A stretch of 58,070 nt of DNA, counting the filler, from Sluysia triapertura (lineage: Eukaryota): assembly GCA_046118255.1 (NCBI GenBank). It is 4 parts of 4 records of this genome, joined end to end, with 100 filler letters (N's around TTAATTAATTAA, not from the genome) between each part and the next. Parts side by side here need not be neighbours in the genome. Positions count along the whole stretch, not along the records: positions 14,244 to 33,997 come from JBJNIA010053219.1; 3 more parts are not named here. The stretch is one strand, 5' to 3'. The notes beneath the pieces were generated by a model. It saw only the letters and a list, made by a program, of their open reading frames with translations, was not told the DNA's origin and did no database searches. The first letter of the stretch is position 1, and each line of letters opens with the position of its first letter. This document shows, in pieces, positions 14,244 through 34,097 of this stretch. Both the position numbers and the translations under genes were made by a program.

Positions 14244-14420
14244 GAATGTTTGAGATATAGATTGTTTTGTTGGTGAATGTAGGTTGGTAAAGTGTTATGA
14301 TTGTGTATTGTTGTTTTATGGGATGAATTGTGTGGTGTTTATAGTTGAAAAGTATGGTTGTGATTACGGTTATTTTAATAAGATTTATTTTGATCTTGCA
14401 TTATAGGATTGACCACTACA
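14244..14420 (-). mobile_element. R2 terminus, inverted relative to copy A
   Basis: TG-rich stretch ending in GATTGACCACTACA. Confidence 0.7.
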
Positions 14421-17400
14421 TCATATTAGGTTTCTGTCTTCTTCGTTGTACCTTAAAGCTAAGTACAAACCAAATTCAATCGTTAATTATTAAGTTTCTT
14501 TAATGTCATTAATATTCAGTTGATACATACAGTCGATTGTTGGATATTCATATTATTCGATACCGGAACATAAATATTTACTTGTAATATATTCTATAAC
14601 GTAAATTCATCATAAATTATAAAATTTAATTTCTGTAAAATAAATGTTCCCTTAAGTATGGAAAGTTTATTTCAGTTGAGTTAATAAATATTTTCATTTG
14701 ATTTTTAGTTTTTCGTCAGAGTTTTGGAATTAAGCTTTCCTATCTTTAACATCACGATAATTAATAATCGCACGTTTAAACAAGTTTATCACGTAAGTCA
14801 TTTTTTATTAGTAACAGAGTAAAAAAACATTTGAGTTTCAAAATTAAACTAATATCCACTTATAGAATAAACACAGACGAGAAAAATACATTAATATCAA
14901 AATTTTATTCCTTAAAATTTATATAGTTTTTATAACGCTGATTTTAATTTATTATAAGAATATATAAATCTTCTTTTGTGAATTTAATCTAAATATCATC
15001 GACATAAAAAATTTAACTTTTATCACATAACTGGAACACATTTGTAATTACGAGTTTTGTCATTTATTTTTTGATAGTCATTGTAATAACTGAATATTGT
15101 TAAAGATCTTGAAAGAATGTGCCCACGAATAACGCTAGAAAGAAGTCCAAATTTTAGTAAATTATATGAAGATTATGTATGTTTCATGGTAATACAATTG
15201 AAATATTTTATCAATTGTATATGATTGTGCTTATGGGATTCTTTATATCCTACAAGGCTTTTTCGAGATAATAAACTTTTTAAATTTCAGATCATGTTAA
15301 TAGATTTTGTAAAAGTAAATAGTCTTGAGTGTTATTCATATTTTAATTTTTAAGTGCCTTAAGCACTATTGTATACAAAATTTAAATAGTGAGATTAACA
15401 GCAGAAATAAATATATTACGAATTATGATTATAAGCAACTACTTAAAACACGACTAGGGCCAAAAACATCTTACTCACTTCTCGACTAAGACTTAAAAAA
15501 GGATATGCCATGTCTTTCGTGACTCTTAGGCCAAATATCTCAGCAACAGCAAACTACAATTGTCTAATCTTTGTTTTATGGTATCACATAGTCATCTTAC
15601 TATTCCCTTTGCTTAGAACTAGTTTATACACAACTAGGACACCAATGACATTTCATCAGGTGAAATGCTAAACTTCCTACCAATCAAAAAAACGTAACCT
15701 CTTCTATTTTCGTCCTTTTGAAGAAGTACTGAGGATAATGTTTTTAGTATATTTAATAATATCCGCAGTTGCAGTTATGATACAACCAATTAATTTTGAT
15801 GTTCCAGTAATGCTGTAACCTAATTAAAGTTTCGCATTTCATCATTAAAAAGTTTATATGCTCTTTGAAGGATTTAGATAATACATCAAATAATAGTATA
15901 GAACGATTTTTTTAAAGAATTCATTCCTTCTTATCGAGTTACGGATACAACTTTCTCCTCAGTATTTACGAACAATTTTTCAGTCATCACCACCTTGTTT
16001 TTAATAAACGATTACATTATATTCATGTTTTATGTTATTTTTATTCATTATTAATAAATGTATTTAATTTAAATAAAATACTATTAAATAAAATAAAATG
16101 TATAAATAACTCAAACTTTATTGTAAATAATAGACTAAACAATGAATTAAATTCTTTTAAATGGCCTCAGATAGGCTTTCTTTTAATTTCACATAAAAAT
16201 AAACTACCGAAATATGTAATTGAAATGGATCACTAACCAAAATGGTGTCAGGAGAAAAGTCTCACATTTATATTTAGATTAACTTATATTTTTATTTTTG
16301 GTCTTTATGTTAGTAATAATAAGGACGATAAAAAAAATAAAAATAATCATAAAAATGTAAAATTTAATTGTAAAACTCAAGAAATAATAATATTAACCTT
16401 CTTAAAATAAAACTAAATAGAACCTTACAACATGAGCCAAATTATAACGACAAAGATAATAATCGACGAAATATTAAAAATTACAATAGTGATATTAAAA
16501 TTGTAACCCTTCTAAAGTGTGATAACATAATATCAAATAAACCTCAAAAAGGCAAATCCTTTCTGAAAACAATAAAATACAAAGTAACACATACAATGCA
16601 TATAAAAACAGTACAAACTCCTCAACCTATACCAAATTTAAAAAAATACTTCATCGCAAACTTAACCCAGATCATCCACCGCATCTAACATCGCAAAAGT
16701 ACTGCCATTCACAAACTATTTTCATAATTTCAATATTTATTTGATAGTTCCTACTTGATTATAGTACTTAAAGAAAAGGAACTGCACTATTTAAATTGAA
16801 GTGTAATAAGTTGCATATTTATTAATCGATAATGACACTTTGTAAAAAAATATCTGTAGCCTAATGAACTAATTGAATTATTATGGAAAATTTTTCGTAA
16901 CAATTCTGATTTTTGTTAATATATTTAGATAATTATGATGCACCAGATTTAGATAATATTACAATTGCCAATAATTTATTTGAATTGGCTAAATTACGTG
17001 TAACAAATTTGGTTTTATCCCAAATACAGATGCCATTTGATTTGTGAGATACTAATTCAATTTAGTTGAGATTATGTGGACTTGTAAGATCCTTGGATAC
17101 ATTCTAAAATTTAAATTGGCATCAGAAAAGTCCCATTAATTGCCAAAAAGAATTATATAATTGGTTGTTATCACACCAAACTATAAAATGACAATAATAA
17201 TAATTCAATAACGAAAATAATTAAGTAAAAAATAATAGGCGTGACACCTATACAACAAAATCAATTATTTTTAATGATAGACGAAATGCCTTTAGAGAAA
17301 ATTAATTATTTTTAAAATAATATGCGTAGAAAAGATAGGCATGATACTGATATAGAAGAGGAAACAAGACTGCAGTCATACAAATTTCATAAAATTTAAC

Positions 17401-19557
17401 GAGTCGGAGAAAATGGTAAAGTATTGTCACGAATAATTTTATAAATTTTGCATAAAATTTGTACATTAATTGGCAAGTGTAGGTATACGGTTCATTGCGG
17501 GCGAGTAAAATTGTGGATCACCACTTGTCTGCCACATCCGATTAGTAGCAGTTTCCATCGATTATTCCAAATTTCTTTTACCGACATAGGAATTTCAAAC
17601 AAGAATAAGTCGTAAGTTATTTTTATATAAGTGTCAAAATCAACTGAAAATCCCAATTTTTCATTTTGTCGCTCGAATAAATCTAGCCTTAAAATCATTT
17701 TAAAAATCCGATCACTTAATTAAGCTGTAAAACTTTAATTATTAAATTCAGTATTATTTACTATAATTAATAGCTGTATTATTTTTATCATCGATTATTA
17801 GAATTCTTTTTTTAATTGTTAAGTTCTACGACGTTCACTTTTGTAATATATTCACATACTTGTTTGTTTTTCTCACATTAAAGGAGTGAAATTATATTAT
17901 ATTGACGTCATATTATATTGACATCATAACAGTTATAACCCGGAATTATTTAACATTTTCGGAAAACAATTTAACGTTAATACATAAAAAGGCCAATTGC
18001 CTTATTGACCAAAAGCTAAAGATTCTCGACGTTCAAAGATTAATGAAGACCCTTAAAGTAATAAAAACTCTTTCACTGTGCCTTTCCATACTGTCGAATC
18101 CATAAAAATAAATTCATATTTGCTAACTTATTTTTAAGAAAAACACTAGCAAATATTTGGTACCCGAACTGGGTGAACATTAAGCCAGTTTAAAGTTATA
18201 AAATTAAGCGAAGTTTTCGTTATAAAGGAAAGAAAACTCTAGAAAATTTTATTTTAATTATTCAAGCAAAAGTCTGAATATTATAAGTACTTGTGGGAGA
18301 GATAAATAATAAATAATTTTAATAAAAATCCAAATCAGTTCATGAATTGTTACGCGAATGATTTAATACTTTCGAAAGTTTTAAATTGTTGTTTTATGAA
18401 GAAATGAGAATAAAGTAGAACTAAGAAAAATATATTTTATGCTAAGTAAAAAAAATATGAATATTTATTATTTAAAAGCTTTAAAAGCATAATAAAACAA
18501 CCAATGCAGTAATCCCAAATAAACTACCACTAATTATACTCTTCTTCAACATTGGTAATGGTCTCTATTAAGAATTTCTTGATATCATACAAAAATATGA
18601 TTAATATTTTGGAGGGCTTTAATCTCTTTAACTTTAAGAACAAATTAAAACCAAAGTTATTTATACGGATTAAACCATTATTATTACAATGGAAATTATG
18701 ATAACAATAACTGTAACTCATGATAACTGTAAATTATGATTGTGTGTGTTTTGTCTAAGTCAAATAATTCGTTTAGTGTTTTGCTTATTTATGAAATCTT
18801 AATTTGTGATGGTTGTGTATGTGTGGAGTTCACTGCAAATATGAATTTCATTCGTTTGTATTTTTCTTTGATCGATCATTACATTGAAAAATTGAAATTA
18901 AAATTTAAAATATCGCGTTTAATCAAGAATTTTATCGGAAATTATGTTAAGCTATGTTAAGTTATAGAAATATTTGCGATTAAAATAGGATCGGCAACAA
19001 GAATTGGAATAAGTTCCTGGAACTTCGGCTATCTGGTATTGTGGTTGAAAGAAACCTCAGCTATTCTACTGAACCATTAAAATATAAAATATATGCCGAT
19101 GAAATATCACTCGGATTATGATTCTGAAATAGTTCAGTTTATAAGTGATTATAAAAAGACTTCTGAGGTTAAGTTCAAATAAAACTATCAAATGAGTGTC
19201 ACTAAGAATTCTAACTTGTACCAATGATATTATCATGTATGTAAGAGGAATATCGAAAATGTTAAAGTTTGTGTAATAACCTATAATAATAATAATAATT
19301 TTACAATCTTTGGAAGTTACATAAATGAGATTGTTTCACATCCAGAAAAAACTTAGTGATCAGCTGCAAACTGTTTCAGGTTATTTCGATTATAGGTTCG
19401 AAATACTCAATTTTCTCTTTAAAATACTTATTTAGGTTGTATATAATAATAGTTTATTAATAAAAATAATGTACCCTTATCATTTTTTCGTGTTGTTTGT
19501 ATTTTATTTTGTAATTATATTTTTATCGTCTATTATGTATATGTCATGTAATTCTAG

Positions 19558-20640
19558 ATGGCACAACCCAATGGCAAAATCTTTATCCAAACCAAGGCTT
19601 TTTATGGAGGCATTGACTGTTTCTCTAAACATAATGTCCCTCCTACTTCATTTTTAAATTCTAAGTCAACCCTTAATCCTCTTAAGTCTGAAATTAATGA
19701 AAACTTTGCCACACATCTTTTTAGTCTATCTTCTACTTGCCCATCAGTTACTATTAATTAATTATTGGGTTTTCCAACAAACCACAGTTTTATCATTTTG
19801 GCAGCCTCGCGAGGTGTTCTCAAGGTTACCTTGACAATTGATTCTTCCCCTCTTCTTTTTCGTCCTTGAGATTTGACAATATTGTCCCTAGGAAGTCGAA
19901 ATGATAACTTAATCCTTTATATGACACCGATGTGAAACATTTCGACGCGTGGCAAGAATAATTAACTTTCGCCCATATTCCGTTCTCACCCATTTTTGAA
20001 AACAAATTAATCTTTGTGGCATTTCATCACGTCTTAGATGTCAAAAATGAACATCAAACTATTCAGTTAGGTTTCATGCCCTACCATAGGAAATTTCATT
20101 CTATTGACATCATAAGACCACGAGTTCGCGTCCAGAATTTTTACAAAGAAATACCTGAACTCAACGACCAAAATCTAACATCGGCTAAGAACATTGAGAA
20201 CATTAGGGGCTTTTGGCTCGCATCTTTGCACGATAAATTTTTTGTTTGTCTTTATCCCGAATTAGTTGTAAAAACATTAAATATTCCTTATGGTTGGTTG
20301 AGAAGAATAGTGAACATCACCAACACCAATCTCGCGTGTTTCTCATCCGCCGATCACATTATAAGAGGAAACCAGGTCCTAAAGTTATTATATCCCTTCT
20401 TACCTAAAATGTCTTTTATGAATCTCACTCAGAATTCGATTTTCTTGTTTGATCATCTTAGGGCTAAGGATCCATCTTTCCTACCGAAATGTCTATCTCC
20501 ATCCCTTTCTTTTTCTTCTTTTACTTCTATTCTATCATCTCCTTCTTAGTCTACTTCTACTTCTGCCTAGCTCCATCGAATCCGAATCCACAAGCCTAAA
20601 ACACCTAAAGAAATTTATTTTCCAAAAAAGAAAATAAAAT
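19558..20640 (+). pseudogene. Orphan intronless coding-like region, broken (includes 177-aa ORF 20016-20549)
   Basis: Higher GC than the flanks; ATG directly after TTCTAG; successive ORFs separated by stops. No family recognised. Confidence 0.4.
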
Positions 20641-20660
20641 TTCTAAAAAAAGAAATTTTG

Positions 20661-20750
20661 CTTCTAGAATGTTCTAGAACATTCCATCGATTTTCATTGG
20701 CTGATAACTAATATATAAACTAGCATCAGTTTAATGAAAATCACCATTTT
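20661..20750 (+). promoter_or_regulatory. Heat-shock promoter: 5-unit HSE, inverted CCAAT box, TATA box
   Basis: TTCtaGAAtgTTCtaGAAcaTTC (20662-20684), ATTGG (20696-20700), TATATAAA (20712-20719), and an Inr-like CCATTTT about 30 nt later. Confidence 0.75.
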
Positions 20751-21873
20751 AAATTTTGCAGCCATTTGTAATTTGTATACAAATTTTCTTTATACAAATC
20801 GGATTGGGCAACGAACAAATTTCTCATCGAAGGATTTTTATGTTCCATGAAAGGGTAACTTATTTTATTGTTAAGGTGATTTTGATTTTATAAGTCAAGA
20901 TCCTAAAATATAGTAAAAATGAATTTTTAGCTTTAATATAGTAAGGACACCGATATATTGAGGGGAAATTTTCTACTCAAATTTTAAAAGTAATTAGATC
21001 GAATATCTTAATAGGATTTAGATCATAAAATAATAATTACGTTTTATTTTGTTTCTTATTCTGTATTATAACCTGTTACACGCATGCATTTAGTTTAATA
21101 TAATTCAAAAGTTAATTGAGTTTTTTCTTTATTGTGCTACTTAAAATTAAGACCATCGTAACAAAGTTGTTAGACGTAATATTTCAAATGATTATAGTAA
21201 AATTCTCAACTTATTAATTACAGAGGTGCCAACTACTAGTTGTAAGACGTTTACTGTAACCGGTCCCTGCTCAATTTTTATTTTGCCGTAAGCTTAGCAT
21301 TAAGAAAACCATAGAAATTCCATGTATTTGCTATTATTATTATTTATTGAAATTTGAAATAAACAAGGAACTTATTTCAGAACTCAGATTGAAGATATCT
21401 AATTTAACGGATGTTGGTGGTTAATTAAATATCAAGAATATTAAAGTAACGTATTGACTAAACGAAAAGAAATTAATTTTTTCGTGAAAATACAAAAAAG
21501 TGATAAATGATTGAACACATTGTGCAAAACTTGTTTTACTTATAATTTTTTAAAAATATTTACAATTTCATTCCTATGTGAAAAATCAATTTCAAACAAT
21601 TCCGGTTTTATGTTCGTACAAATTAATTTATCGAGTTTTATATAATGTTTTATTCATACGAAGAGTAATAAATCAGCTAATCAAAATTATTATCATATTA
21701 TATATAATACAGCGACATTTTTACATAATTCATAACTCTGTTAAATTTACATTTCTTATGAAAAATTCCACATCGTTAATAACATTTTTGTATGCATGTA
21801 TGCATTATCTGGTGTTTAGAACATTTATATTTTTTATAAATATTTAACCAAAGTTTTGTTATTATTAACTAAC

Positions 21874-22048
21874 TTTATATGCGCCTCTTTCACGTAATAG
21901 ATCAGCAGCCGTCACAAACTGGTCCACATCATCAATGATATCGTCCACAATAATAGCAATTTTTCCACTGACATCTCCAACTATAGTCAGGGGAGGTTTC
22001 TCTTTAGGCTGCATCATCGGAAGGAGTTCCATGCCAACATGGAGAGAT
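21874..22048 (-). CDS. PRPSAP: PRPP synthetase-associated protein, internal exon
   Basis: AG/GT-bounded exon [63 protein letters not shown] and DDIIDD are PRPSAP-specific (catalytic PRPS has DDMADT). Confidence 0.92.
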
Positions 22049-23240
22049 CTAAAAGAAAAATACTTTGAAAACAATTTTTTCATTCGAATAAATGCTAAAT
22101 AATTAATTTATGATTAATTTCAGTAAAATTAAAAATAAAAATAGTCACTTGAAAACATTAGATCATTTTGAAATTTCTTTATATTTGCACTTTTTAGCAA
22201 TAAACATAAATCAAATGGTTTTTTCGTCATTTTTTGGAGATTGAAAGTATTTAACTATCACCGTAAGATATTCTACAATTTGATGGTTTCGGAAAACCGA
22301 ATAGCTTCAATTCTTAAAACTTCGTAATTTATTTGAAGTTCAAAAAAAGTTATTATACTCTTAAAATCTGTCAAAATAATTGTATAATTTACTAGAATAA
22401 AAATAAATTATTAACGATAGGTTAATCCATTTTATAAGGTCTAACATTTCACAATTGTGATGCTTCATAAAGAATTTATTTATAAAGATTTATCACCTAT
22501 TCATATTATAACGTAGTTAATAAACTCATCGAATTTTTATAGTTATAAAGCATCAGTTTGATTAAACAGCCGGTGGTCTCGATTTTGAGTCCCGATCAGT
22601 CCATGTTATGAAGTCTAACATTATATCTAACCTATTATCCACCAATGTCCCTTCTTTGGACGCTCTTCCTTGTAATACCCATCTTTTAAATGCAAGTTCT
22701 AAATAAAATATATTAAAGAACATGTGAAAATAAAAATGGTATCGGATAAATGTATTCTTTATTTCATTGTTTATTGACATTCTAATAAATTTAGTGAATT
22801 CTAGGAAATAAACCGTGCGACATTTAAATCAAAGGTCGAAACACAATAATTGTTCTTTCGTGAATAATAATAACTTACATTCTTAATTCTAATTTATTCG
22901 GCTGATCGATTATTTATCTGTAGAACAGAAATAGCGGTTCAAAACAAATAAAAATTCATTTAATTATATTTACTTTTCATAAAAATTAAAGTTACGTATT
23001 AATTAATTTTTCACTTATCTACACCTGAATATTTTATTAAAATTCTAAGATCTGTTGCCTCCAAGACATTAACTTCTCTGCAATGTATGCTATGAGGCCT
23101 ATTTCTACGGACTCTACATGACACCATATATAAGAATTAAATTGCATAGTATTGCTACTTTGCTGAAGTCACGCAAATTTTAGTATATTATGAATCGAAA
23201 ATTATGGCAATTATTAATAATTCTTGCTTTCGACGGCATG

Positions 23241-23560
23241 CAGAGGTTCTCGTGCCTAAGCTAGTTTTATCTTTACGGTTAAATTTAAAAGTTGTTTACA
23301 GTTAAAAATTTTATGAAAAAATGTATAATTTTAATCTCGAATTTTGTCGAATTTTGCCTACTCAGGTTCGTCTTTCTGGTTCACACACAACTTTTTATTT
23401 CAAAATAACGCAAGATATTTTGAATTGTGTATTCAACTTTTGTAAATCGTTCCATATTAGGATTCATTGCTTCTAATTAAAAAAATTCAGTATGAACATC
23501 TGTTTAAGGTAAGTTCTAGCGGGTTGAGGACCAGGATTCCCAAATGCTTTCAAAGTAGTC
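23241..23560 (-). mobile_element. pogo/Tigger transposase C-terminal relic with a possible TIR
   Basis: LEAMNPNMERFTKVEYTIQNILRYFEIK resembles the recalled Tigger C-terminal DPNxERxxKV motif. Pogo-like end CAGAGGTTCTCG at 23241. Confidence 0.45.
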
Positions 23561-25039
23561 GTTAGTCCGAACTGATGTGACATATTCAATAAAATATTAA
23601 AATAAACATATACTTTATACATACCATTTCTTAAGAAATATGCTAATATTTATGATTTTAATCTTGTTTCTGTTTACCTTCTAAGTGTACATTTATAAAA
23701 TTAAATATTAATAACTAGATACAATAAGAAAGTCTAAATTAAGCGGCATATAAAGAATGCATGAAGCATTTAATAAATATATGAATAAAAAAGATCAAAA
23801 CATATTCATATATGGTATGTAATTTTATATTATGTATATGTAGAATCAGCAATTTGTTTTAGTATACAGCTTTACTTTTCTTCAAAACATAATGGAACAC
23901 CAATTGAATAGAGTAACGTTATAAAGTCGAAAAGCAATTTAAAAAATTGAAGATTTTCTGATGTTCTCTATTCTACCTACATTTTAAAGGCCACTTTTGT
24001 TTAAGACCAAATTGATTAAAGAAAGATTCGATTTAGTTATTCCAGAACATAAGTTGATTATCATTTACACGGTTTTATATCTATTGATTTTTTAAAATAT
24101 ATCAATAGTTTTCTATCATTTTTTCTGCATTATTGCAAATTTTTTATTTAACAAATGAATACGGTGTGGAATTCAAATCGTATTTTACCTGTAGAAAATA
24201 AAAATCTATTTTTGTCTCAATTTAATTTACGGAACTTCGTTATTCTTGCTGACGATGGACTAATATTATTTTTCTGTACTAATGATTTGATTTCATAAAA
24301 TGGTGTTAAAAAAACATCGAAAATTAAAACAAAGAAACTTTATTCAATGTGACAAAACAATAATAACTAACATAAATATTTTTCATTTCATAACCAGACT
24401 ACATTGTAAATATGGGACTCAAATGAAATTATTCATGCAGGGTTAGTTATAAAGAACAGCTATTTAATTTGTACACATTTTTTCGTGATAATCAATATTT
24501 TTCAAGTTTCCATCATATTTTTATAAAATTAAAACGTGTCTATTTATTATTAAAAGCAAAAGCTGAATTTTATATGCGGATTTTATAAGCTGCTTTGTTA
24601 ACAAGCAAAAAAACAAAAGTAAATAATTACAATTTACGATTTAATGACCTGCATTCCATTGGAGAGTAAAGGCTAAAAATTAGAATAGATTCGGGAGTTG
24701 ATTTTACTGATAAATAATTTAAATTATTAATAAACCAAAAGTAAACATGATTATTTATTACTTAGTGCAAATAAAAAAGCAAAACAAGACTAGGTTGGCC
24801 CAAAAGTACTTTGTTCGCGTTCTAAATAATCTTGTAACGACGAGGTAACAACTTAATAAAATTTAAATACCAGTTTTGCTGCTAGACACGATTTAAGACA
24901 AGTTCTGAAGTAATCTGAAGGAGCAATGTCTCGAATATGATATTAAATCAAATCCATCAAGATCATCTAATATCTCTTCTGTCTTTTTCAATGCATGAAG
25001 TTAAGAAGTATCTTGCTTAAGTAACACTTTATTTCTGTT

Positions 25040-25320
25040 AAATAAATCTAGTTATCAATCAATAATAATAGCACCAACTATTTTTATCTGATATACCAAC
25101 TATCAAACACAAATATCCTTTTTTTAGTCAATCTCGCCCAAACCTAACCATTCATTTTCACATTCTTGATTACAATGCTGAAGTATTGCATTAAATTTCT
25201 GCTAATTTGTAATCTTAATTTGTAAACTTAAAAATTTGAAACTTAGAACACAAATCTTTATGGCCTCTAAAACGGTGATACTTAGAGACAGCATGGTCAA
25301 TTCTTATTTTTAAACTTTCT
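25040..25320 (+). repeat. R2 internal fragment (same orientation as copy A)
   Basis: CCAAACCTAACCATTCATTTTCACAT resembles 12842 CCAACCTAAATCCATTTCATTTGCACAT. Confidence 0.5.
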
Positions 25321-25930
25321 ATGTCATTGTTGTAACAGCTTTACATTTTATACCAGAGCTGTCTACTTTGCATATCATTCTATGTGCATTTGCTGATGTG
25401 ATTTCTTTTCTCCAATAATGCCGGAACAAGCCATATTTTATTGAAATTTAAAATACAATTAAAAGAACAATTGAAGCGTTCAAAAAATATAGAATACCAC
25501 ATTTTAAAAATTGTATTACAAAAATATAAAATACTTATGGGACAACCTGATAATAAATTACATATAATATACAAAAATGTTGTTAGAAGGTAAAGCATTA
25601 AAAAAGAAAATTCATTAAAATGGATACATGTGCAAGATCAGACTATATACAATATTCAAAATCATAATATATTACATTTTAAAAGTATTAAATTTATTAA
25701 AATTAATTTTCATTCAGAAACTGTAAAAACAAAAATAAATCAAATAATTGTTAAATAACATTAGCAGGAAATATTTTATTAAAAAAACCATAAGATAATA
25801 CATGCACTAAATTATTTGATTAAGATGCATAAATTAAAACCAATAACTTCATAAAATAAAATATGGCAGGATATTGTTTTATAAGAAATTAAATGTTTCA
25901 ATTAATGTTTATTTTAGGATTAGTATTTAA

Positions 25931-26083
25931 CACGTTGAATGCCACGGGGATCACCGGTGACCTCAGTGAATTAACTGTTCTGTTGTAAATAATATTTCAT
26001 CAAAATAAATATGCAACACATAGTGAGAAATTCATTTTGGCCAGACGGGCAAGCTATGTAAAATCAGCGTGGCATTCAACGTG
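25931..26083. mobile_element. piggyBac-like MITE
   Basis: TTAA TSD; perfect 16-bp TIR CACGTTGAATGCCACG; subterminal palindrome TCACCGGTGA. Confidence 0.9.
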
Positions 26084-26102
26084 TTAAAACTGAAAATTGT
26101 CT

Positions 26103-27725
26103 TTATTGTGATTTTAGTGGTATTGTTTTAATGGCCTGACACCAATTTGGTAATGTTGTTTTAGATTCCAAATTTAGTAAGATTATGTTCAGGTCCTTAC
26201 TCCTATTTGATAAGGTTTTATGACTTGATAAGAGTTTGTTATGATTAAATTGGAAAAGATTGAAGCTTATGATATTATCATTCCGTGGGTATAAATGTAT
26301 CGGTTCATAATTCGTAGGACCTACTCTTACTTGATAAAAAGTACCTTTAAAACTATAAATGTTTCTTATCAAGTCTTTGCTCATAATATTAATATCATAA
26401 TTACCATAAAGGGAACATTTATTAAACACACAAAATGCAACTTTAAGCAAATTACATATAAAATTAGACAAGGAATAAGTACATTTCAAATTTTTATTAA
26501 ACATAAAAACTAAAATTATTATATTTACCGATGCATCCTCTTGTACATCAGTCTGCCTCGCTCTAAAGGTATCGTCTGAATAAAATATAATATTTAACTT
26601 AAAAAATGAACCAAAAAATAAAAATTTACGATACATGTCGTGCCAGCATAGCGATAATCGTCTGCACTCTGAATCAAATTAGTACTCTTCGACCTGCGTC
26701 TTGTGATACGAAGTATAACTGACTGATTCAATTTAACTGGAACAAGACAATATATTTCATGTTTAACGACTAATCGTAAAATAACGGGATCATAGGTAAG
26801 ATTGTCCAGGTAAGTATTTACAATAGATATTAGAGTACAATTAGCTAATCGATCTGAGATAATTTCATTAGTTGTATTGATTCGAACATCAACTTTACAG
26901 ATGAATTTATTTTGTCGAATTATTTTACTCAAATTAAGAGGATAAATCAAGTAATATAAACTACTACAAATGATGATAAATCTAGAAAGTATTCTTTAAA
27001 ATTCATAAAGATTTATCACACATTTTATTTTTACAGGACATACTATTGAATGACTTAATGATCTTAGATTAATTGCAAATATAAATTTAATTTCATTTGG
27101 TATCTTTAAATATCTGGAACAATACATCAAAACTAAATCGTATAACTTTAAACTTAAAACAGATATATAACATTTACAAAATCTTGAATTAATACTTGAT
27201 AATGAACATGATGAATTAACGATAGTGTTTTTGTAAATAATTCTGAGGTATTTCCAATATTCATTTGATAATAAAAACTCAATCATAATATCATCACTTT
27301 TACTGGGATGGAATGTTACTACTAACTTTACGATTTTATTATGTTTCGAAAAGTCATTCAAAGAGAAAACTGTGATAGGACTAACAAATTGAAATTGATC
27401 ATGAAGGAATTTTCTAAATTTATGAATTAATTTTAAATCAAAAACACCAATGATTCGGCCTGACTCATTTTCTCTATTATTAAGTGTTATCTGCGTCTCC
27501 GAAATTGTCATAACTAGATCGACATGGAAAATGAATACCACTGTTTGATGACAAACATGTTTGTGTTTGTTTATAAGCTATTCTTATTTCTGCTATCTTT
27601 TTAATTGAAGAATCATTATTTTCGACTTGTTTCAGTTCTTCGGCTAAGGCTTTACTTGAATCTATCATTTGTTCGATATTAAGATAATTATCTGTGGTCA
27701 ATTTTGAATTTTTGTACTTTGCCAA
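26103..27725 (-). pseudogene. Unknown gene, frameshifted or stopped, retaining an intron
   Basis: Four adjacent ORFs (81, 181, 118, 177 aa) with an in-frame TAA at 26996 and a frameshift near 27540. The GT-AG intron 26576-26634 joins frames correctly. Confidence 0.55.
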
Positions 27726-27824
27726 ATTTTTCGAATATAAGAAATATTATCGTCCGCTCTTTTTTTGATTTTGCTTTTAATTATTTATTACTATATTTTA
27801 TTTTTAAAAATTTATTTTTTTTAG

Positions 27825-28943
27825 ATGGTGACCAGTGATTGGTCATCCAACCAGAATTCTCTATGTGCAAATGAATGAAATCAATTCTGGTCGGATGCCA
27901 GTTACAAGAACAGAAATTTAGTAAAATGGTAATGACGAATTATTGGCCATCATTAGTATTGACACAATAATGATGTTTGTGATTAGCAATGTCAACACTG
28001 GTGATGGTAGTAACAAATTATATTATTTTGTGAAAATTTAATTAATTTAATGAAATTTTATAACAATAATAACAATGTTGTTATTATTATTAATATTATT
28101 TTTCAACAAAAATATTAAAAATTAAGTTTAATATTAAAATATTAAGTTTCTTTTCTTTGAAGCTTAAACATGATCTTACTATCTTTTTCTTAATTCTTAA
28201 CATATGTTAGATCTAGATGAAATGAAAAATGATGAATTTGGATGTAGTAACAATAATAAGATGCACGATATTCTAGTTATTGTTATTGCATTGCATAAAC
28301 TTGAATTCTTTAAAACTGTACACGATCTTCCTTTAATTCTTCTAGATTTCTAACATATTTTGAAAGTAATAATCTTGGAGTACAGATTAATTTGAATGCA
28401 TTTGTATGTGTGATTAACGTCTTAAGTTATAATAGTATTTGTTATGCAGTGCAGTTAAATGTGGAACACTGGAATGAACTTTTAGATAGTGACTTATGTT
28501 TCTGATTAAGGGTGTATTTAAATATTGGAAGATCGTGAATAAAATACCTATTGAGAAGAGTGTAATTTGGTAAATGTAAAAAGGCAACTACAATACAACT
28601 CTTCGTATATTTAAAATATTATTGTGCAATGTTTTGTGTTATTTGTTTATTTAATGTTTTTGAATGGTAATGTATTGTGTTGTTGGTGATTGTGCATAGA
28701 CAAATGGTGAATTTAAGATGTTTTAATTGATTCGAAGGTGTAAAGTAGATAATTTACATGTTTTAGGTAAATTTGTTGGTGTAAGTTGATGGTATTAAAT
28801 GTAACTGTGGTTTATATATTATGAGCTTGTGAAAATGCTTACTTTAGGGAAATGAACTATTTTGTAAATGCGTAAATATTGAGGTGTTGAAGGTTTCATT
28901 AGTTTTTTTGAAATTTTAAGAGTTATGAAGGATGTCCACTACA
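27825..28943 (-). mobile_element. R2 repeat copy B
   Basis: Hairpins at 27844-27897 and 27946-28008; body aligns to 53640-54400; ends GTCCACTACA. Confidence 0.75.
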
Positions 28944-29123
28944 TTATTTTTTCGTGTTTATAATAATTTTATTTCACTTAATTTTGGGGAATCCCCACTA
29001 TTTTAGTTTAAATAATTTTTAATATATTCTCTTAAGTGATATTTTGGGGACGAATTAAATAGCATTCACAGGAGATTCCATTTTCAATTTCGTTTTGTTG
29101 AGTCTCGCTTGGTTTGTTATTCT

Positions 29124-29260
29124 TGTGGTGACCAAACTAATTTATTAAAATTTCATACAATTTATAGCATAACTTTACAATTATTCACCAACCACACAAC
29201 TTTAAATATTAAGATCTTATAATTTTAAAATCCATTCAGCGTAAAATCTACAACAATAAA
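29124..29260 (+). mobile_element. R2 terminus, truncated
   Basis: TGTGGTGACCAAAC followed by CA-rich sequence. Confidence 0.45.
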
Positions 29261-30089
29261 TGTTTTAAGTCTTTCAAAAAAAATGAATGAAATTTCTATG
29301 TAACACTTTCAACTTGCCTCAGTTCTCTACAACTCCTTTCTTACTCTTACTTCTATCTTCTCGTTATAACCTTTAGTTTACAAACAATCGAAGACGCTAA
29401 ACTACCTGTCAACGTATTAAAGCAGTTAAAGATTATAATTCGAAAATTTCATTAATTTCCAAAACTTTTTTCGAAGAATTAAAAGATTCAGATATTCTAA
29501 AAAATCAAGATGTTGTTGAACAATGAAAGAAGAAATTATATATGACTTAAACATATCCGTAAAATATTTTGCAATTAAACAACAATTAAAATATGCCTTT
29601 ATCAAAATAGTTCGAGAATTACAGGAATTTTACGAACATTGTGCTTAATTTTGGTTTTTCTATGGAGTGAAATACAAAATGTATCATAATGTCGTAAAAA
29701 AAATTCACATTAAGATCTACCGATAAAACGTTCATGAATTTTATTTTCTAAACAAAAAAATCACGAATTAATAAATGTATCCTGAATTATCAATAGAAAC
29801 TCATGATTTATACTTAAAACGACGCAAACAAGAAACAGTTGAAATTCGACAAATGAAAGCTGTTAGTATTAGTAAAGGGCAAAGGTAGATATAAAGGTTC
29901 AAGATTCAGGATAACAGAATAAGGTAAACTTTATTGAGGAATTGAGATAGGGATTATGATGAATTGTAATGATAAGTATATGAAATACTCGAATCAAGAT
30001 AAGACAATGAGAAATACGAAGAAATAACATTTTATAAGGTTTTATTGTTGCCTGTACATTTTAATATGTAATTACTACTAAAATTAGTA

Positions 30090-30510
30090 GTACCTCAAAA
30101 TTAATTATGAACGAAGATATTTCGATATATATATATAAAGTTTAACTATATAAAGTTGTTGAGAATAAATATAATATGATTTATGTACATGAAGTTGATT
30201 ATGTAGAATTGATAAATGATAGAATGTATGAAGTAATTATGAACGAAGATAACGCGATTTAAATAAAAGAGACAAAGTGCATAAAGTTGTTACGAATAAA
30301 TATAATATGACTTATTTAGGACAGATCAATGACAAAATGTATAAATTATCCACGAACAAAGATAATATAACATACATAGAAAATATGAACGCTAAAATAT
30401 ATGAAGATGGTATAGAACTAACTAACGATAAGTGCATAAAAACATAATATGACTCACATAGAACAGATGAACGATAATTACGAAGTAATTACGAACGAAG
30501 ATGATATTAT
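30090..30510. repeat. Degenerate tandem repeat
   Basis: Recurring TTA(T/C)GAACGAAGAT, AATAAATATAATATGA and TAAAGTTGTT blocks. Confidence 0.65.
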
Positions 30511-31639
30511 TTTTGTGCAAGAGGTGATGGTGTTTATCTTAAAAAATATTACGCAAGTGAGTCCTTTACAATATTAGTCTTACTCATTTAAGGGCTAAGT
30601 TGTAAGTAGCAAACAAAAGGAAAAAATAATAAATGGAGATTAGTTATAGTTTTAAGTGCTCAACTATTTTTGTAGTGTAAAGTCAATATTTTTCTTTGAA
30701 AATAAAAATAATTAATTGAAGTTTAATAGATGAGAATTTACGTCAGAGTTTACTACCGTATAGAAAAAACGGTGCCTTAAATCGACTTTATTTTAATATT
30801 TTTAGTATATTTTACGTCCGTGTAAAAACGGCGTACATTATGTATAATTGCAAGTAAAAAATATGGAATTTTATACTACAATGTATTAAGTACGACAAAC
30901 AAATAAAAAAATAAAAATTAACAAATAATTAATAATGAATTTATCTGATTATATTATAATCGTGAATATGAGTTTTAATTGAAATTTTTCGACTCCAAAA
31001 TTAAAAGGAGCGATAAAGAAAAGTTAACGATTTTAAGCCTGAATTTACCTCTAATAAAATAGTCAAGCTTACTATAAAAACTAGCCAATAAATTAATTTA
31101 TATACGAGATGTGAGATATCAAAATTATGAATCCGAGAAAGCGATTAATATTATGAATCCAAGAAATCGATTGAACTCCAAATCGAAATGGAAATATCAC
31201 TTGTTTTTAAAATTTTTTTAAGATCGGTGTATGTTTAATGTGAATTTAACATAGATTTAAATATGTTTTAAACAACCTTGATTAGGTTCTTTTAAACAAA
31301 ATATATTATGTTATAAATTATTTTATATTATTTTATAAATTTATTAATATTAGGCTAGCATTATTTAAAAGTATTAACATTTTTATATTTTATTTAGACA
31401 ATATTTAATATTTTATTTAAAAGTATTAAAACATATTAATTTATTAACATATTAATATTGATTTTTCTTTAAATAAATTTTAGAGTGTGTATGTATTTTT
31501 AGAACTAGAAAATTTTCTTTAATATTTATTGATTTTTTTAGACTTTTATTTTCAGTATTTTTAGAAATATAACGTTTGATTTTATTTTTAGATTAGATAG
31601 AATTGGTGTTTTATTTTTAGATTAAATGACTTTTCAAGT

Positions 31640-31925
31640 ATTTTATGCTAAAAATGCTTAAACTCTTATACTTACAAAATACCCGAGGGTCAGTTCACCT
31701 AATATACACGGTTTATACCAATACTGGAGACACGTTGGTTGGATTTTACAAAAGAGCAACGAAAAAAGTCAAGCTTAAACAAAACTATGTTAACACCTCT
31801 AATCATAAGGTAGATTTTAATTTTATCTTGACTTTCTTTAATTTAAGTTATATTTCACTAGCCTTTTTAAGGTCTAGTTTTCAAAAATTTATAAATAATA
31901 ATAACCTTCTTAAGGTCTAGTTCAG
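31640..31925 (+). repeat. R3 interspersed repeat
   Basis: TTCACCTAATATACACGGTTTATA and repeated AAGGTCTAGTT; inverted copy at ~47100-47650. Confidence 0.7.
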
Positions 31926-33566
31926 AAAAAAATTATTTTATAATTCAGTAAAAATTCATTCTATGATAAATTTATATTACTCCAAAAGACACTAAAATAA
32001 AAATTACAGAATTGCAAAGCATAATATAATTTTACATCTACGTTCAAATTATTGACGTATCTAAAATTGATTTTAAATTATGCTAGTCTTATTAAGATCT
32101 AGCATAAATAATCAAAAATTTTTGAGTGATTTTAGACCTCCTATTAAGGTGAAATTTAAAACTTATACATAAAAAATTATTTGGATGACATGGAAAAAAC
32201 TTGATCGGCAAAAATTATCTTCAAAAAAAATTTTTTCTTTTCCAAGTTCTATTAAAATTGTCTTTAGTTGATTTAAATTCCTCTGCTTATATTAAATTTT
32301 ACAAAGCCATCTTAAGATTGATTAATTAAAGCAAAAACTTGCCTATTAATCAATTTAAACAAACTAAATTAAAAATTCAATAAATTTTCAAATCAAAGTA
32401 TATTAAATTAAGGTTTTATATAAATATTTTAAATCAAAATATATCTTAAATTAGAATTTATTTTATACCAAAATTTTGTTTTATTTAAAATTTTATTTTT
32501 TTGAATTTATTATGATAAAACTAATTATTTAATGAAATTAAAAATACACAGAAAATAAATTAAGATTTACAAATTTAAATTAAAAATACATCAAAAATGC
32601 AAAACACAAACTAAATTAAGATTTACAAATTTATACCTTGACAATTTGATTTCGTGGTCTATGGACATAATTAATTTATTTTTAGATTTTACAGATTTAT
32701 AAACTGATCAAAGATAAAGTATTTAAAGTAATAACAAACAGATAAGATGACTTATGCCGAACAAAGGAATGATAAAGTGGTCACGAATATAGACTATGGA
32801 TAGCAGATGACGTATAATGCCATCAGGAATGTAGATCATAAGTTACTCGTTGAAGGAATTATTAATAAATTTAATATAAAGGCGATCGAAACAATGCTTC
32901 ATGCAGCTAAGTGGATTGTTGAAAAACCTGAACAGGATAGCTGTTTCGAAGTAAGATCTTCTCGTATTATTACCTATTTTTTTATTCCATCGAGTTCTTT
33001 CTCCCATATTTCATGTTTATAATAAATTAATTATGGCGTTATACTTTAGTATGTTTCAATTAAAATTATTTATTAAAGCATTTCAATTTATAATATCTTT
33101 TATAATTGCTAATGATAATAAACTTTGTTTCGATAAACTTAATTTAAATAAATGTTCTATTATAATATTTTCTTTAAAACTCTAATTATTTTAATTGAAA
33201 CTTAAGATATTTAACATAAAACTAAATTAACTTCGCTTTTGAGTTATTGTCAGTAATCTATATTATACAAGGTTCACTCCAACAGTAATTTATAGATAAT
33301 GATTATAAAAATACCACATTAAATTCTACAACCTTAATGCTAACAAAATCTAATTTAATATGATTTCGTCACTAGATAGAATCTAACTTAAATTGTACTT
33401 CATTTTAAGTTTATATTTATCTCTTACTTAAGTAAAGAGAAAAGTCTATAATAAAAAACGTAAAAATCAAAATGTAAACAAAATTGAGTTTGAAGGTTAA
33501 AGCAGCGGTGTTCGAAGAATATCTGATGGAATCAAAACAAATATGACTTTGAAATATTTTGATCAT

Positions 33567-33842
33567 TATTGACACATTAAAAATAATGAATTTAATTTTA
33601 GTTTTTAGAATTTAATTGATTTATTGTTTTTCACACCAAATTTCCTTATGGAAAATGTTTAAGGTTCTTATTCTCAAACAAGCTATTCTACAAACACTTC
33701 AAACTCACTTCTAGATTCCACCCTCTCATATTCCATTCATTACATTTGCACAAAGTTCAACATTCCATAATTAAGAATTAATTAAAATGTGACTTTGCAA
33801 AATATTAAGGCTTCCTTTGCATGAACTCGGTCAAACCATACT
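33567..33842 (+). mobile_element. R1 proximal part (empty-site reference for the 56503 insertion)
   Basis: Colinear with 56461-56910 except that the 157-bp insert is absent. Confidence 0.8.
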
Positions 33843-34097
33843 TTTGTTCGGTTTTAATACGACCTGAACAATTATGAAAAAATATTAAATTTATACTTTG
33901 GGTCCGCCTACGTCAAACGATTTACCTATAATGGACGTCTGCGTAGGATTTTAAAGCTGTGAAAAATACTAGTGCAAGAATACTACGATTTTTATCTNNN
34001 NNNNNNNNNNNNNNNNNNNNNNNNNNNNNNNNNNNNNNNNNTTAATTAATTAANNNNNNNNNNNNNNNNNNNNNNNNNNNNNNNNNNNNNNNNNNNN

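What the first reader, a model, noticed from the sequence alone, without database searches (positions are those of the whole stretch)
27844..28008. Twin hairpins at the inner end of R2 keep their pairing through compensatory changes
Seen: each of three copies has two stem-loops (stems of roughly 12-20 bp) about 40-60 nt apart. Hairpin 2 left/right arms are: C CCACCATCAGTACTGACA/TGTCAGTACTGGTGATGG; B CCATCATTAGTATTGACA/TGTCAACACTGGTGATGG; A (reverse complement) CCGTCATCAACGCTGACA/TGTTATCGTTGGTGAAGC. The core changes GTA:TAC to ACG:CGT in A and C:G to T:A in B while still pairing, and many residual mismatches are G-U on the same element strand. Hairpin 1 arms carry CCAATCAG-like motifs. Inference: the structure is either selected (small-RNA precursor, promoter, or transposition/replication signal) or regenerated by arm-to-arm conversion.
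Basis: partly seen in the sequence, partly recalled or inferred. Interest (0 to 1): 0.7.

Follow-up and report, generated by a model that had tools for sequence, protein, structure and literature searches.

The report
Conserved twin hairpins inside a transposon
Two 15-19 bp stem-loops sit at the junction between the non-coding module and the orphan gene of a 2.8-kb repeat present in well over a thousand copies. Their pairing has been kept through many two-sided base changes between subfamilies, so the fold itself matters to the repeat, but what it does is still unknown.

Summary

**The hairpins.** Hairpin 1 has arms at 27844-27858 and 27883-27897. Hairpin 2 has arms at 27947-27964 and 27990-28007. 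The stretch folds far better than shuffled sequence.

**The repeat.** The hairpins lie inside a ~2.83-kb interspersed repeat (about 26113-28943) with sharp ends, no TIR, no LTR and no clear TSD. It consists of a 1.1-kb non-coding module ("R2", conserved in sequence but otherwise unstructured) and a ~570-aa orphan ORF on the minus strand. That ORF starts about 90-170 bp from the hairpins.

**Covariation.**
- Across 54 copies, 15 of 35 stem pairs show two-sided changes. None of 500 shuffles reaches that number.
- Hairpin 2 occurs in at least six sequence types, all forming 16-20 bp stems.
- Within individual copies, including the window's copy B, changes are one-sided and strand-neutral. That is plain decay after insertion.

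**Reading.** The fold is maintained only in the propagating lineages, so it is a cis-acting structural signal of a transposable element. It is most likely read as a folded single strand.

**Open points.** Function, strand and element class are unresolved. No RNA data exist and the ORF has no detectable relatives. One reader detail is wrong: copy B has no C:G to T:A swap.

The parts
26113..28943 (-). Whole interspersed repeat unit (unclassified transposable element, about 2.83 kb). The coding orientation is the minus strand.
   Evidence: The right end is sharp and ends ...GTCCACTACA at 28943 in 18 loci with unrelated flanks. The left end is at about 26113 (TTTAGG...) in 10 loci with unrelated flanks, and some copies carry a ~37-nt tandem duplication there. 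The first look found 1130 candidates for the hairpin stretch. No TIR was found, and no clear TSD in 3 full copies.
26103..27725 (-). Decayed orphan ORF of the element. It survives as fragments at 27480-27725, 26996-27541, 26594-26950 and 26103-26636, and runs through the element's end into the flank.
   Evidence: ORF list. The family has 150 scored matches from 416 candidates, with open frames up to 578 aa. L048 has 570 codons with a single internal stop. There is no hit in Pfam, PDB sequences, the word-based search or the atlas, and only one marginal hit in the profile search. Two AlphaFold2 models reach pLDDT of only about 40.
27826..28943 (.). R2: a conserved non-coding module of about 1.1 kb. 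The hairpins lie at its inner end.
   Evidence: It is more conserved than the ORF, and its outer ~450 bp are the most conserved part. The consensus holds no long ORF and shows no 3-base periodicity. Outside the hairpins there is no consensus secondary structure.
27844..27897 (+). Hairpin 1. Arms are at 27844-27858 and 27883-27897 with a 24-nt loop.
   Evidence: The family stem is 16-18 bp and 91.3% of cells pair. One column alternates U:A (28 copies), C:G (15) and U.G (6).
27946..28008 (+). Hairpin 2. Arms are at 27947-27964 and 27990-28007 with a 25-nt loop. The base pair G27946.T28008 extends the stem.
   Evidence: In the family, 94.1% of cells pair and 10 of 19 pairs carry two-sided changes. 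At least six sequence types exist.
27830..27847 (+). Small palindrome (GACCA...TGGTC) overlapping an ATTGG motif. It is not kept as a hairpin in other subfamilies.
   Evidence: Several subfamilies have ATGTTT... in place of its left arm, so only the right half (TTGGTCATCC) is conserved.

Best explanation
The two stem-loops are a cis-acting structural module of a high-copy, unclassified transposable element of about 2.83 kb.

**Position.** They sit where the element's conserved 1.1-kb non-coding module (R2) meets the short variable stretch that precedes its orphan ORF of about 570 aa. In the ORF's orientation they lie about 90-280 bp upstream of it.

**Shown.**
- The fold, rather than the sequence, is what the propagating lineages keep. 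Stem length (16-20 bp), loop length (about 23-27 nt) and position are constant, while the stem letters change on both sides together.
- Once a copy is inserted, the constraint stops. The window's copy B is such a decaying copy.

**Inferred.**
- The module works as a folded single strand. RNA is more likely than single-stranded DNA.
- The folding strand is probably the one antisense to the ORF, that is, the window's plus strand.
- It serves as a shape-specific handle for a protein that the element needs for expression or mobilisation. That protein could be its own ORF product or a host or partner factor.

**My split of the inferred part.**
- Plus-strand transcript that runs from the hairpins into R2: about 0.2-0.25.
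- Leader of the ORF mRNA: about 0.15-0.2.
- Single-stranded DNA signal: about 0.15.
For: **Significance and family size.** The hairpins are real and significant. The 54 sampled copies come from a family with more than 1100 first-look candidates.

**Covariation.** 15 of 35 pairs and 63 cells carry two-sided changes, against 7.3 and 15.7 in shuffles and 6-15 cells in the slid controls.

**Stem types.**
- Four hairpin 2 types occur in the loci held. Between consensus stems there are 5 compensated pairs (I vs III), 4 (I vs II) and 2-3 (I vs IV).
- Left arms pair best with right arms of their own type.
- Two further types are whole subfamilies genome-wide.

**Other supporting points.**
- Loops are not conserved between types.
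- Within types, changes are one-sided and strand-neutral, 17 G.U against 14 A.C in each hairpin. This shows neutral decay after insertion.
- The hairpins are the only part of R2 with a consensus structure, at -18.2 kcal/mol on the plus strand and -10.1 on the minus strand. The rest of R2 is near 0.
- The ORF lies next to the hairpins, on the opposite strand, in almost all loci with room.
- Hairpin 2 is more stable on the plus strand in 47 of 54 copies.
- Hairpin 1 loses both CCAAT boxes together but keeps its pairing.
Against: - There is no transcript evidence at all.
- The strand preference rests on two fixed G.U columns. Without them the counts are 27 G.U against 22 A.C. Type C also carries a fixed C.A, which favours the other strand.
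- The alignment used for the counts was fitted to the structure, and the copies are related, so the shuffle control overstates significance.
- A tree of the neighbouring R2 sequence does not sort the hairpin types. Independent events therefore cannot be counted, and recombination between subfamilies is possible.
- L048, the copy with the longest open ORF, lacks the inner R2 including both hairpins.
- The element class and the ORF function are unknown, so no partner protein can be named.
Confidence: 0.55

Rival explanations
1. Double-stranded promoter reading. The region is the element's RNA polymerase II promoter, perhaps bidirectional. The palindromes would then be paired binding sites for dimeric or repeated transcription factors, such as NF-Y on CCAAT/ATTGG boxes, and no fold ever forms.
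For: - The region lies 90-280 bp upstream of the ORF.
- Up to four CCAAT/ATTGG pentamers occur within about 110 nt, where about 0.2 would be expected at 25% GC. An A/T-rich TATA-like run follows on the ORF strand.
- The minus strand of R2 is not depleted of ATG (12 found, 13 expected). It is therefore unlikely to be a scanned leader, and the ORF's transcription start probably lies downstream of the hairpins.
- NF-Y binding to transposable-element promoters is well documented (PMC12065363, PMC3730095).
Against: - The two CCAAT boxes in the hairpin 1 arms are both lost (CCAAC/GTTGG) in 15 of 54 copies while staying complementary.
- The hairpin 2 stems change wholesale between types (I, II, III) yet always pair over 16-20 bp across a loop of about 25 nt. 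That is not how factor half-sites evolve.
- The fourth ATTGG is absent in types II and III.
Confidence: 0.15
2. No function. The arms are kept alike by a mechanical process, such as arm-to-arm conversion or template switching within the palindrome during copying of the element. The hairpins would then be a self-perpetuating by-product.
For: - Two-sided changes are frequent.
- Type III looks like a new hairpin placed next to a remnant of the type II left arm.
- Hairpin types are scattered on the R2 tree, which fits recombination or conversion.
Against: - Resident genomic copies are not converted: about 7% of cells are unpaired and the changes are one-sided.
- Stem length, loop length and position have stayed constant across subfamilies whose ORFs are only 37-50% identical.
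- Two G.U columns have stayed fixed, although conversion should have erased them.
Confidence: 0.12
3. Small-RNA precursor. The hairpins are processed into miRNA- or siRNA-like RNAs that regulate the element or the host.
For: Two hairpins of about 60 nt lie about 50 nt apart, which resembles a clustered precursor. Many transposon-derived hairpins do yield small RNAs (general knowledge).
Against: - Stems of 16-20 bp with loops of 23-27 nt are shorter than canonical animal Drosha/Dicer substrates.
- The letters of any mature arm are not conserved between types.
- No Rfam family matches.
- No small-RNA data are available.
Confidence: 0.05

Closest known systems
3' stem-loops of stringent-type LINEs and their SINEs, recognised by the reverse transcriptase (e.g. 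PMC3472496, PMC5135761; R2 3'UTR RNA, PMC11194090)
   Same: Both are cis-acting hairpins inside a mobile element, and in both the shape is conserved more than the sequence. Subfamilies carry different stems.
   Different: Here the hairpins are internal, about 940-1100 bp from one end and about 1700 bp from the other, not at the 3' end. No reverse transcriptase lies in or beside the element. There is no poly(A) or microsatellite tail.
Packaging and dimerisation stem-loops between the 5' LTR and gag of retroviruses and LTR retrotransposons (general knowledge)
   Same: Several stem-loops lie just upstream of the first ORF, at the border of a long non-coding 5' module.
   Different: R2 is not an LTR: there is no second copy at the other end and no PBS or PPT. 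The ORF has no Gag, zinc-knuckle or any other recognisable domain. The two fixed wobble pairs favour the strand antisense to the ORF.
Folded single-strand recombination or replication sites (integron attC, IS200/IS605 subterminal hairpins, the Helitron 3' hairpin; general knowledge)
   Same: Imperfect palindromes are recognised by structure. Sequence is variable in the middle and short motifs are conserved at the stem ends. Here those motifs are CCAYCAT...TGACA and TGTCA...TGRTGG.
   Different: The position is internal rather than subterminal. No tyrosine recombinase or HUH/Rep protein is detectable. Helitron ends (5' TC, 3' CTRR, A|T target) are absent.
NF-Y / CCAAT-box promoters carried by transposable elements (PMC12065363, PMC3730095)
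   Same: CCAATCAG/CTGATTGG boxes lie in both orientations within about 110 bp, upstream of the element's ORF.
   Different: The two boxes in the hairpin arms mutate together to CCAAC/GTTGG and stay complementary. Hairpin 2 has no such motif.

Membership tests
Stringent LINE/SINE 3' stem-loop | The hairpin lies in the 3' UTR within tens of nt of the element's 3' end, followed by a short repeat or A-tail. | tested here: not met
   The hairpins are 935-1100 bp from the 28943 end and about 1700 bp from the 26113 end.
Stringent LINE/SINE 3' stem-loop | The element or a partner sharing its tail encodes a reverse transcriptase. | tested here: inconclusive
   There is no RT domain in the element's ORF. 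The 150 best RVT_1 places share no contig with the element. Contigs are short, however, and a partner sharing only the tail was not searched for.
LTR | A second, direct copy of the repeat at the other end, TG...CA ends, and a PBS or PPT next to it. | tested here: not met
   R2 occurs once per unit. The other end, at about 26113, lies inside the ORF. No direct repeat of 40 nt or more exists in the 19.7-kb piece.
TIR DNA transposon | Terminal inverted repeats and a fixed-length target-site duplication. | tested here: not met
   The ends TTTAGGAAG... and ...GTCCACTACA are not inverted copies of each other. No consistent duplication was found in 3 full copies, which is a small sample.
Helitron 3' hairpin | A hairpin 10-20 nt before a CTRR 3' end, a 5' TC, and insertion between A and T. 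| tested here: not met
   See the ends and flanks. The hairpins are internal.
miRNA-like precursor | A stem long enough for Drosha/Dicer processing (about 22 bp plus a basal stem) and a conserved mature arm. | tested here: not met
   Stems are 16-20 bp and loops 23-27 nt. The arm letters differ between types.
miRNA-like precursor | Discrete small-RNA reads from the arms. | not testable with these tools
   No RNA run holds the sequence.
NF-Y/CCAAT promoter | Invariant CCAAT pentamers at the functional boxes. | tested here: not met
   This holds for the two boxes in the hairpin 1 arms. The T:A pair inside CCAAT/ATTGG is C:G in 15 of 54 copies and U.G in 6. The outer ATTGG motifs are only partly conserved.
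Any curated RNA family (Rfam 15) | A covariance-model match. | tested here: not met
   No match at E <= 1 over 14244-33997 on either strand. No tRNA was found.

The most novel reading that the evidence does not exclude
The 2.83-kb unit may be a new kind of mobile element. It has a lineage-specific ~570-aa protein with no detectable relatives, a strongly conserved 1.1-kb non-coding module, and no TIR, LTR or RT. On this reading its mobilisation depends on the twin hairpins as a folded recognition or origin site. For example, they could mark a non-coding R2 transcript or a single-stranded DNA intermediate that the orphan protein binds.
Probability: 0.12. Interest if true: 0.8.

Novelty: new variant of a known kind. 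Interest (0 to 1): 0.45.

Why it matters
Structure-conserved cis signals are how many mobile elements are recognised by the machinery that copies them. This one is unusually clear: at least six alternative stems occupy one position in a family of well over a thousand copies. It also sits in an element that fits no standard class and whose only protein is an orphan.

If the fold's partner were found, it would say how this element moves or is expressed. It would also give a ready-made natural series of compensatory mutants for testing. For the host genome the window's copy is an ordinary decaying insertion with no sign of host function.

Tried and rejected
**Searches on the hairpins and the region that found nothing**
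- Rfam over the whole piece, tRNA search and tandem-repeat search: nothing relevant.

**The ORF**
- Pfam on all fragments and on the best copies, PDB sequences, ESM atlas and the word-based search of 5.8 billion clusters: no relatives.
- Profile search of 1.84 billion representatives: one hit at E = 6.5e-4.
- Two AlphaFold2 runs reached pLDDT of about 40, so no fold search was made.

**Readings of R2 and the element that were rejected**
- R2 as an LTR or a long TIR. The inverted pair in L036 turned out to be two separate insertions flanking a Rab-like host exon.
- R2 as coding: no ORF and no 3-base periodicity.
- R2 as a structured RNA: no consensus structure beyond the hairpins.
- R2 as an AUG-free leader: not depleted of ATG.
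- A reverse transcriptase neighbour: none of the RT places shares a contig with the element.

**Tests that stayed unresolved**
- TSD search: unresolved with only 3 full copies.
- A tree to count independent compensatory events: unresolved or mosaic.

**Limits reached**
- Expression could not be tested. Only one run, not on record as RNA, holds the stretch.

Full report
**What is at the coordinates**

The piece is very AT-rich, about 25% G+C. It comes from a 619-Mb eukaryotic assembly in 263,945 contigs.

- Hairpin 1 has 15-nt arms at 27844-27858 and 27883-27897. They are 93% complementary and enclose a 24-nt loop.
- Hairpin 2 has 18-nt arms at 27947-27964 and 27990-28007 around a 25-nt loop. 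It has 15 Watson-Crick pairs, two T.G pairs and one A.C mismatch.
- 49 nt separate the two hairpins.
- The 197-nt stretch folds at -57.6 kcal/mol on the plus strand (z = -4.4) and -49.5 kcal/mol on the minus strand (z = -3.8). None of 200 dinucleotide shuffles does as well.

**What the hairpins belong to**

The stretch is highly repeated. A genome search gave 1130 first-look candidates, and the 40 that were scored are 79-93% identical to the window. Comparison with the fetched loci defines a unit of about 2.83 kb.

- The right end is sharp...GTCCACTACA at 28943, followed by unrelated sequence in 18 loci.
- The left end is at about 26113 (TTTAGG...), again with unrelated flanks. Some copies carry a ~37-nt tandem duplication there.
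- The ends are not inverted repeats, and R2 occurs only once per unit.
- Three full copies show no consistent target duplication.
- An apparent inverted pair of R2 copies in L036 is two separate insertions around a Rab-like host exon.

The unit has two parts.

*The ORF.* The left 1.6 kb carries an ORF on the minus strand.
- It is broken into four fragments in the window.
- It is open for up to 578 codons elsewhere. L048 has 570 codons with a single internal stop.
- At 25% G+C such open frames cannot arise by chance, so the gene is real.
- It has no detectable relatives: Pfam, PDB sequences, the ESM atlas, the word-indexed search and a profile search of 1.84 billion representatives, which gave one hit at E = 6.5e-4.
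- Two AlphaFold2 models reach a mean pLDDT of only about 40.
- The ORF has no stop codon inside the element. It reads through the terminal repeat into the flank.

*R2.* The right 1.1 kb ("R2", about 27826-28943) is non-coding.
- Its consensus has no long ORF and no three-base periodicity.
- It is nevertheless more conserved than the ORF, especially its outer 450 bp.

In almost every locus with room, the ORF starts 80-170 bp from the hairpin region on the opposite strand. The hairpins therefore sit at the junction of the two parts.

**Covariation**

I built a covariance model from 28 type I copies with the two stems as its structure.

| Measure | Observed | Shuffle control | Slid controls |
|---|---|---|---|
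| Cells forming a standard pair | 92.8% | 89.7 +/- 0.2% | 19-54% |
| Pairs with a two-sided change | 15 of 35 | 7.3 +/- 1.7 (0 of 500 reach 15) | 3-10 |
| Cells with a two-sided change | 63 | 15.7 +/- 3.0 | 6-15 |

Hairpin 2 carries 10 of its 19 pairs with two-sided changes.

The signal comes from distinct subfamily types.

| Type | Left arm | Right arm |
|---|---|---|
| I | CCATCATCAGTGTTGACA | TGTCAACACTGGTGATGG |
| II | CTA(A)CCACTATCAGTAG | CTACTGATAGTGGTAG |
| III | ACCACCATTCATGCTGACAT | ATGTCAGTATGAATGGTGGT |
| IV | CCGCCATCATCATCTTTGACA | TGTCATCGATGGTAATGGCGG |

- Ungapped comparison of the consensus stems gives 5 compensated pairs between I and III, 4 between I and II, and 2-3 between I and IV. 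Left arms pair best with right arms of their own type.
- Loops differ completely between types. Loop length (23-27 nt), stem length (16-20 bp) and position are kept.
Its arms, CCACCATCAGTACTGACA and TGTCAGTACTGGTGATGG, have 23 and 53 exact matches, on the same contigs and 23-25 nt apart.
Its left arm, CCGTCATCAACGCTGACA, has 766 places within two mismatches against 7 for the reversed control. Its usual right arm, TGTCATCGTTGGTGATGG, lies 24 nt downstream.

That makes at least six stem variants.

In hairpin 1 one column alternates U:A (28 copies), C:G (15) and U.G (6). This converts CCAATCAG/CTGATTGG into CCAACCAG/CTGGTTGG in both arms together.

**What happens inside single copies**

Within type I, and within hairpin 1, departures from the consensus are one-sided. 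They show no strand preference: each hairpin has 17 extra G.U against 14 A.C.

The window's copy B is such a case. Its right arm is the consensus, and its left arm carries C-to-T and G-to-A transitions.

Inserted copies simply decay, and the arms are kept matched only along the lineages that produced new copies. This argues for a role in the element's own propagation or expression. It argues against a host function, and against a repair process acting on resident copies.

**Which strand, and RNA or DNA**

- Hairpin 1 is equally stable on both strands.
- Hairpin 2 is more stable on the plus strand in 47 of 54 copies, at -23.6 against -20.2 kcal/mol. This comes from two columns in which G.U is the fixed state. 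Without them the counts are 27 G.U against 22 A.C.
- Type A adds a fixed G.T on the plus strand, whereas type C adds a fixed C.A that favours the other strand.
- RNAalifold across all of R2 finds a consensus structure only at the hairpins, at -18.2 kcal/mol on the plus strand and -10.1 on the minus strand. Elsewhere the value is near zero. R2 is therefore conserved as sequence, not as a fold.
- The minus strand of R2 carries 12 ATG triplets where 13 are expected. It is thus unlikely to be a scanned 5' leader of the ORF. The ORF's start of transcription then probably lies downstream of the hairpins, and the hairpins would lie outside that mRNA.

Taken together this weakly favours the plus strand, as a transcript running into R2 or as single-stranded DNA. 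No RNA run holds the sequence, so this remains an inference.

**Promoter reading**

Most subfamilies carry up to four CCAAT/ATTGG pentamers within about 110 bp, upstream of an A/T-rich TATA-like run and of the ORF. NF-Y-bound promoters in transposable elements are well known (PMC12065363, PMC3730095).

Three points speak against this as the whole explanation:
- The two boxes in the hairpin 1 arms are lost together while staying complementary.
- The fourth box is missing in types II and III.
- Hairpin 2 changes its letters wholesale.

Promoter motifs may well be present, but they do not explain the pairing.

**Comparison with known systems**

The closest functional analogues are the following:
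- the stem-loops recognised by stringent LINE reverse transcriptases (PMC3472496, PMC5135761, PMC11194090);
- the packaging hairpins upstream of gag in retroviruses and LTR retrotransposons;
- folded single-strand sites such as attC, IS200/IS605 ends and the Helitron 3' hairpin.

Membership in each of these fails on tested features. The position is internal. No reverse transcriptase, recombinase or Rep protein was found. There are no LTR, TIR or Helitron ends. No Rfam family or tRNA matches.

**Caveats**

- The alignment was fitted to the structure and the copies are related.
- A tree of the adjoining R2 sequence does not sort the hairpin types, so I cannot count independent events and recombination is possible.
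- L048, the copy with the longest ORF, lacks the inner part of R2 including the hairpins.
- The organism is not known to me.

**Verdict**

The function is unresolved. This is a new variant of a known kind (a structure-conserved cis signal of a mobile element), carried by an element that is itself unclassified.

Noticed in passing
window 25930-26087: A ~158-bp MITE-like element abuts the left end of the repeat. It has ~19-nt terminal inverted repeats (CACGTTGAATGCCAC...) flanked by TTAA on both sides. Many copies exist in the genome at 80-93% identity.
   Followed up: partly
window 26103-26140 and loci L040, L062: The element's ORF has no stop codon inside the element. It reads through the terminal ~37-nt unit and ends at the first stop in the flanking DNA. 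Some copies carry two tandem copies of that unit (L041, L044, L024, L027).
   Followed up: partly
window 28500-28943 (R2 outer part): The non-coding outer ~450 bp of R2 are the most conserved part of the whole element (7-10% variable columns, against about 25% in the ORF). On the plus strand they are G+T-rich. They have no ORF, no periodicity and no consensus structure, and their role is unexplained.
   Followed up: partly
loci L013, L018, L053, L054 and others (hairpin 1 loop and inner edge of R2): On the plus strand, R2 conservation starts right after a pyrimidine run ending in AG, followed by ATG. Several subfamilies also have GTAAGT or GGTAAG inside the hairpin 1 loop. On the minus strand, some subfamilies read GTAAGT/GTAAAT just after the hairpins. 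These motifs look like splice sites, and their meaning is unknown.
   Followed up: no
L048 (G000:C192682) 1158-1310: The copy with the longest open ORF (570 codons, one stop) has lost about 780 bp of the element, matching window 27676-28453. The lost stretch includes both hairpins.
   Followed up: no
window 21865-22083 (-): A host exon encodes part of a phosphoribosyl-pyrophosphate synthetase (Pribosyl_synth, E = 1.5e-24). The repeat lies about 4 kb away from it.
   Followed up: no
window 19244-20743: A local rise in G+C to 0.32-0.35 contains a 177-aa ORF (20016-20549, +) with no Pfam match. It may be another host exon or a different repeat.
   Followed up: no
L036 3487-3735 (+); L035 5544-6177 (-): A Rab32/38-like host exon lies between two separate R2 insertions. 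In another locus, a fragment with a helix-turn-helix that looks like a transposase lies beside a copy of the element.
   Followed up: no
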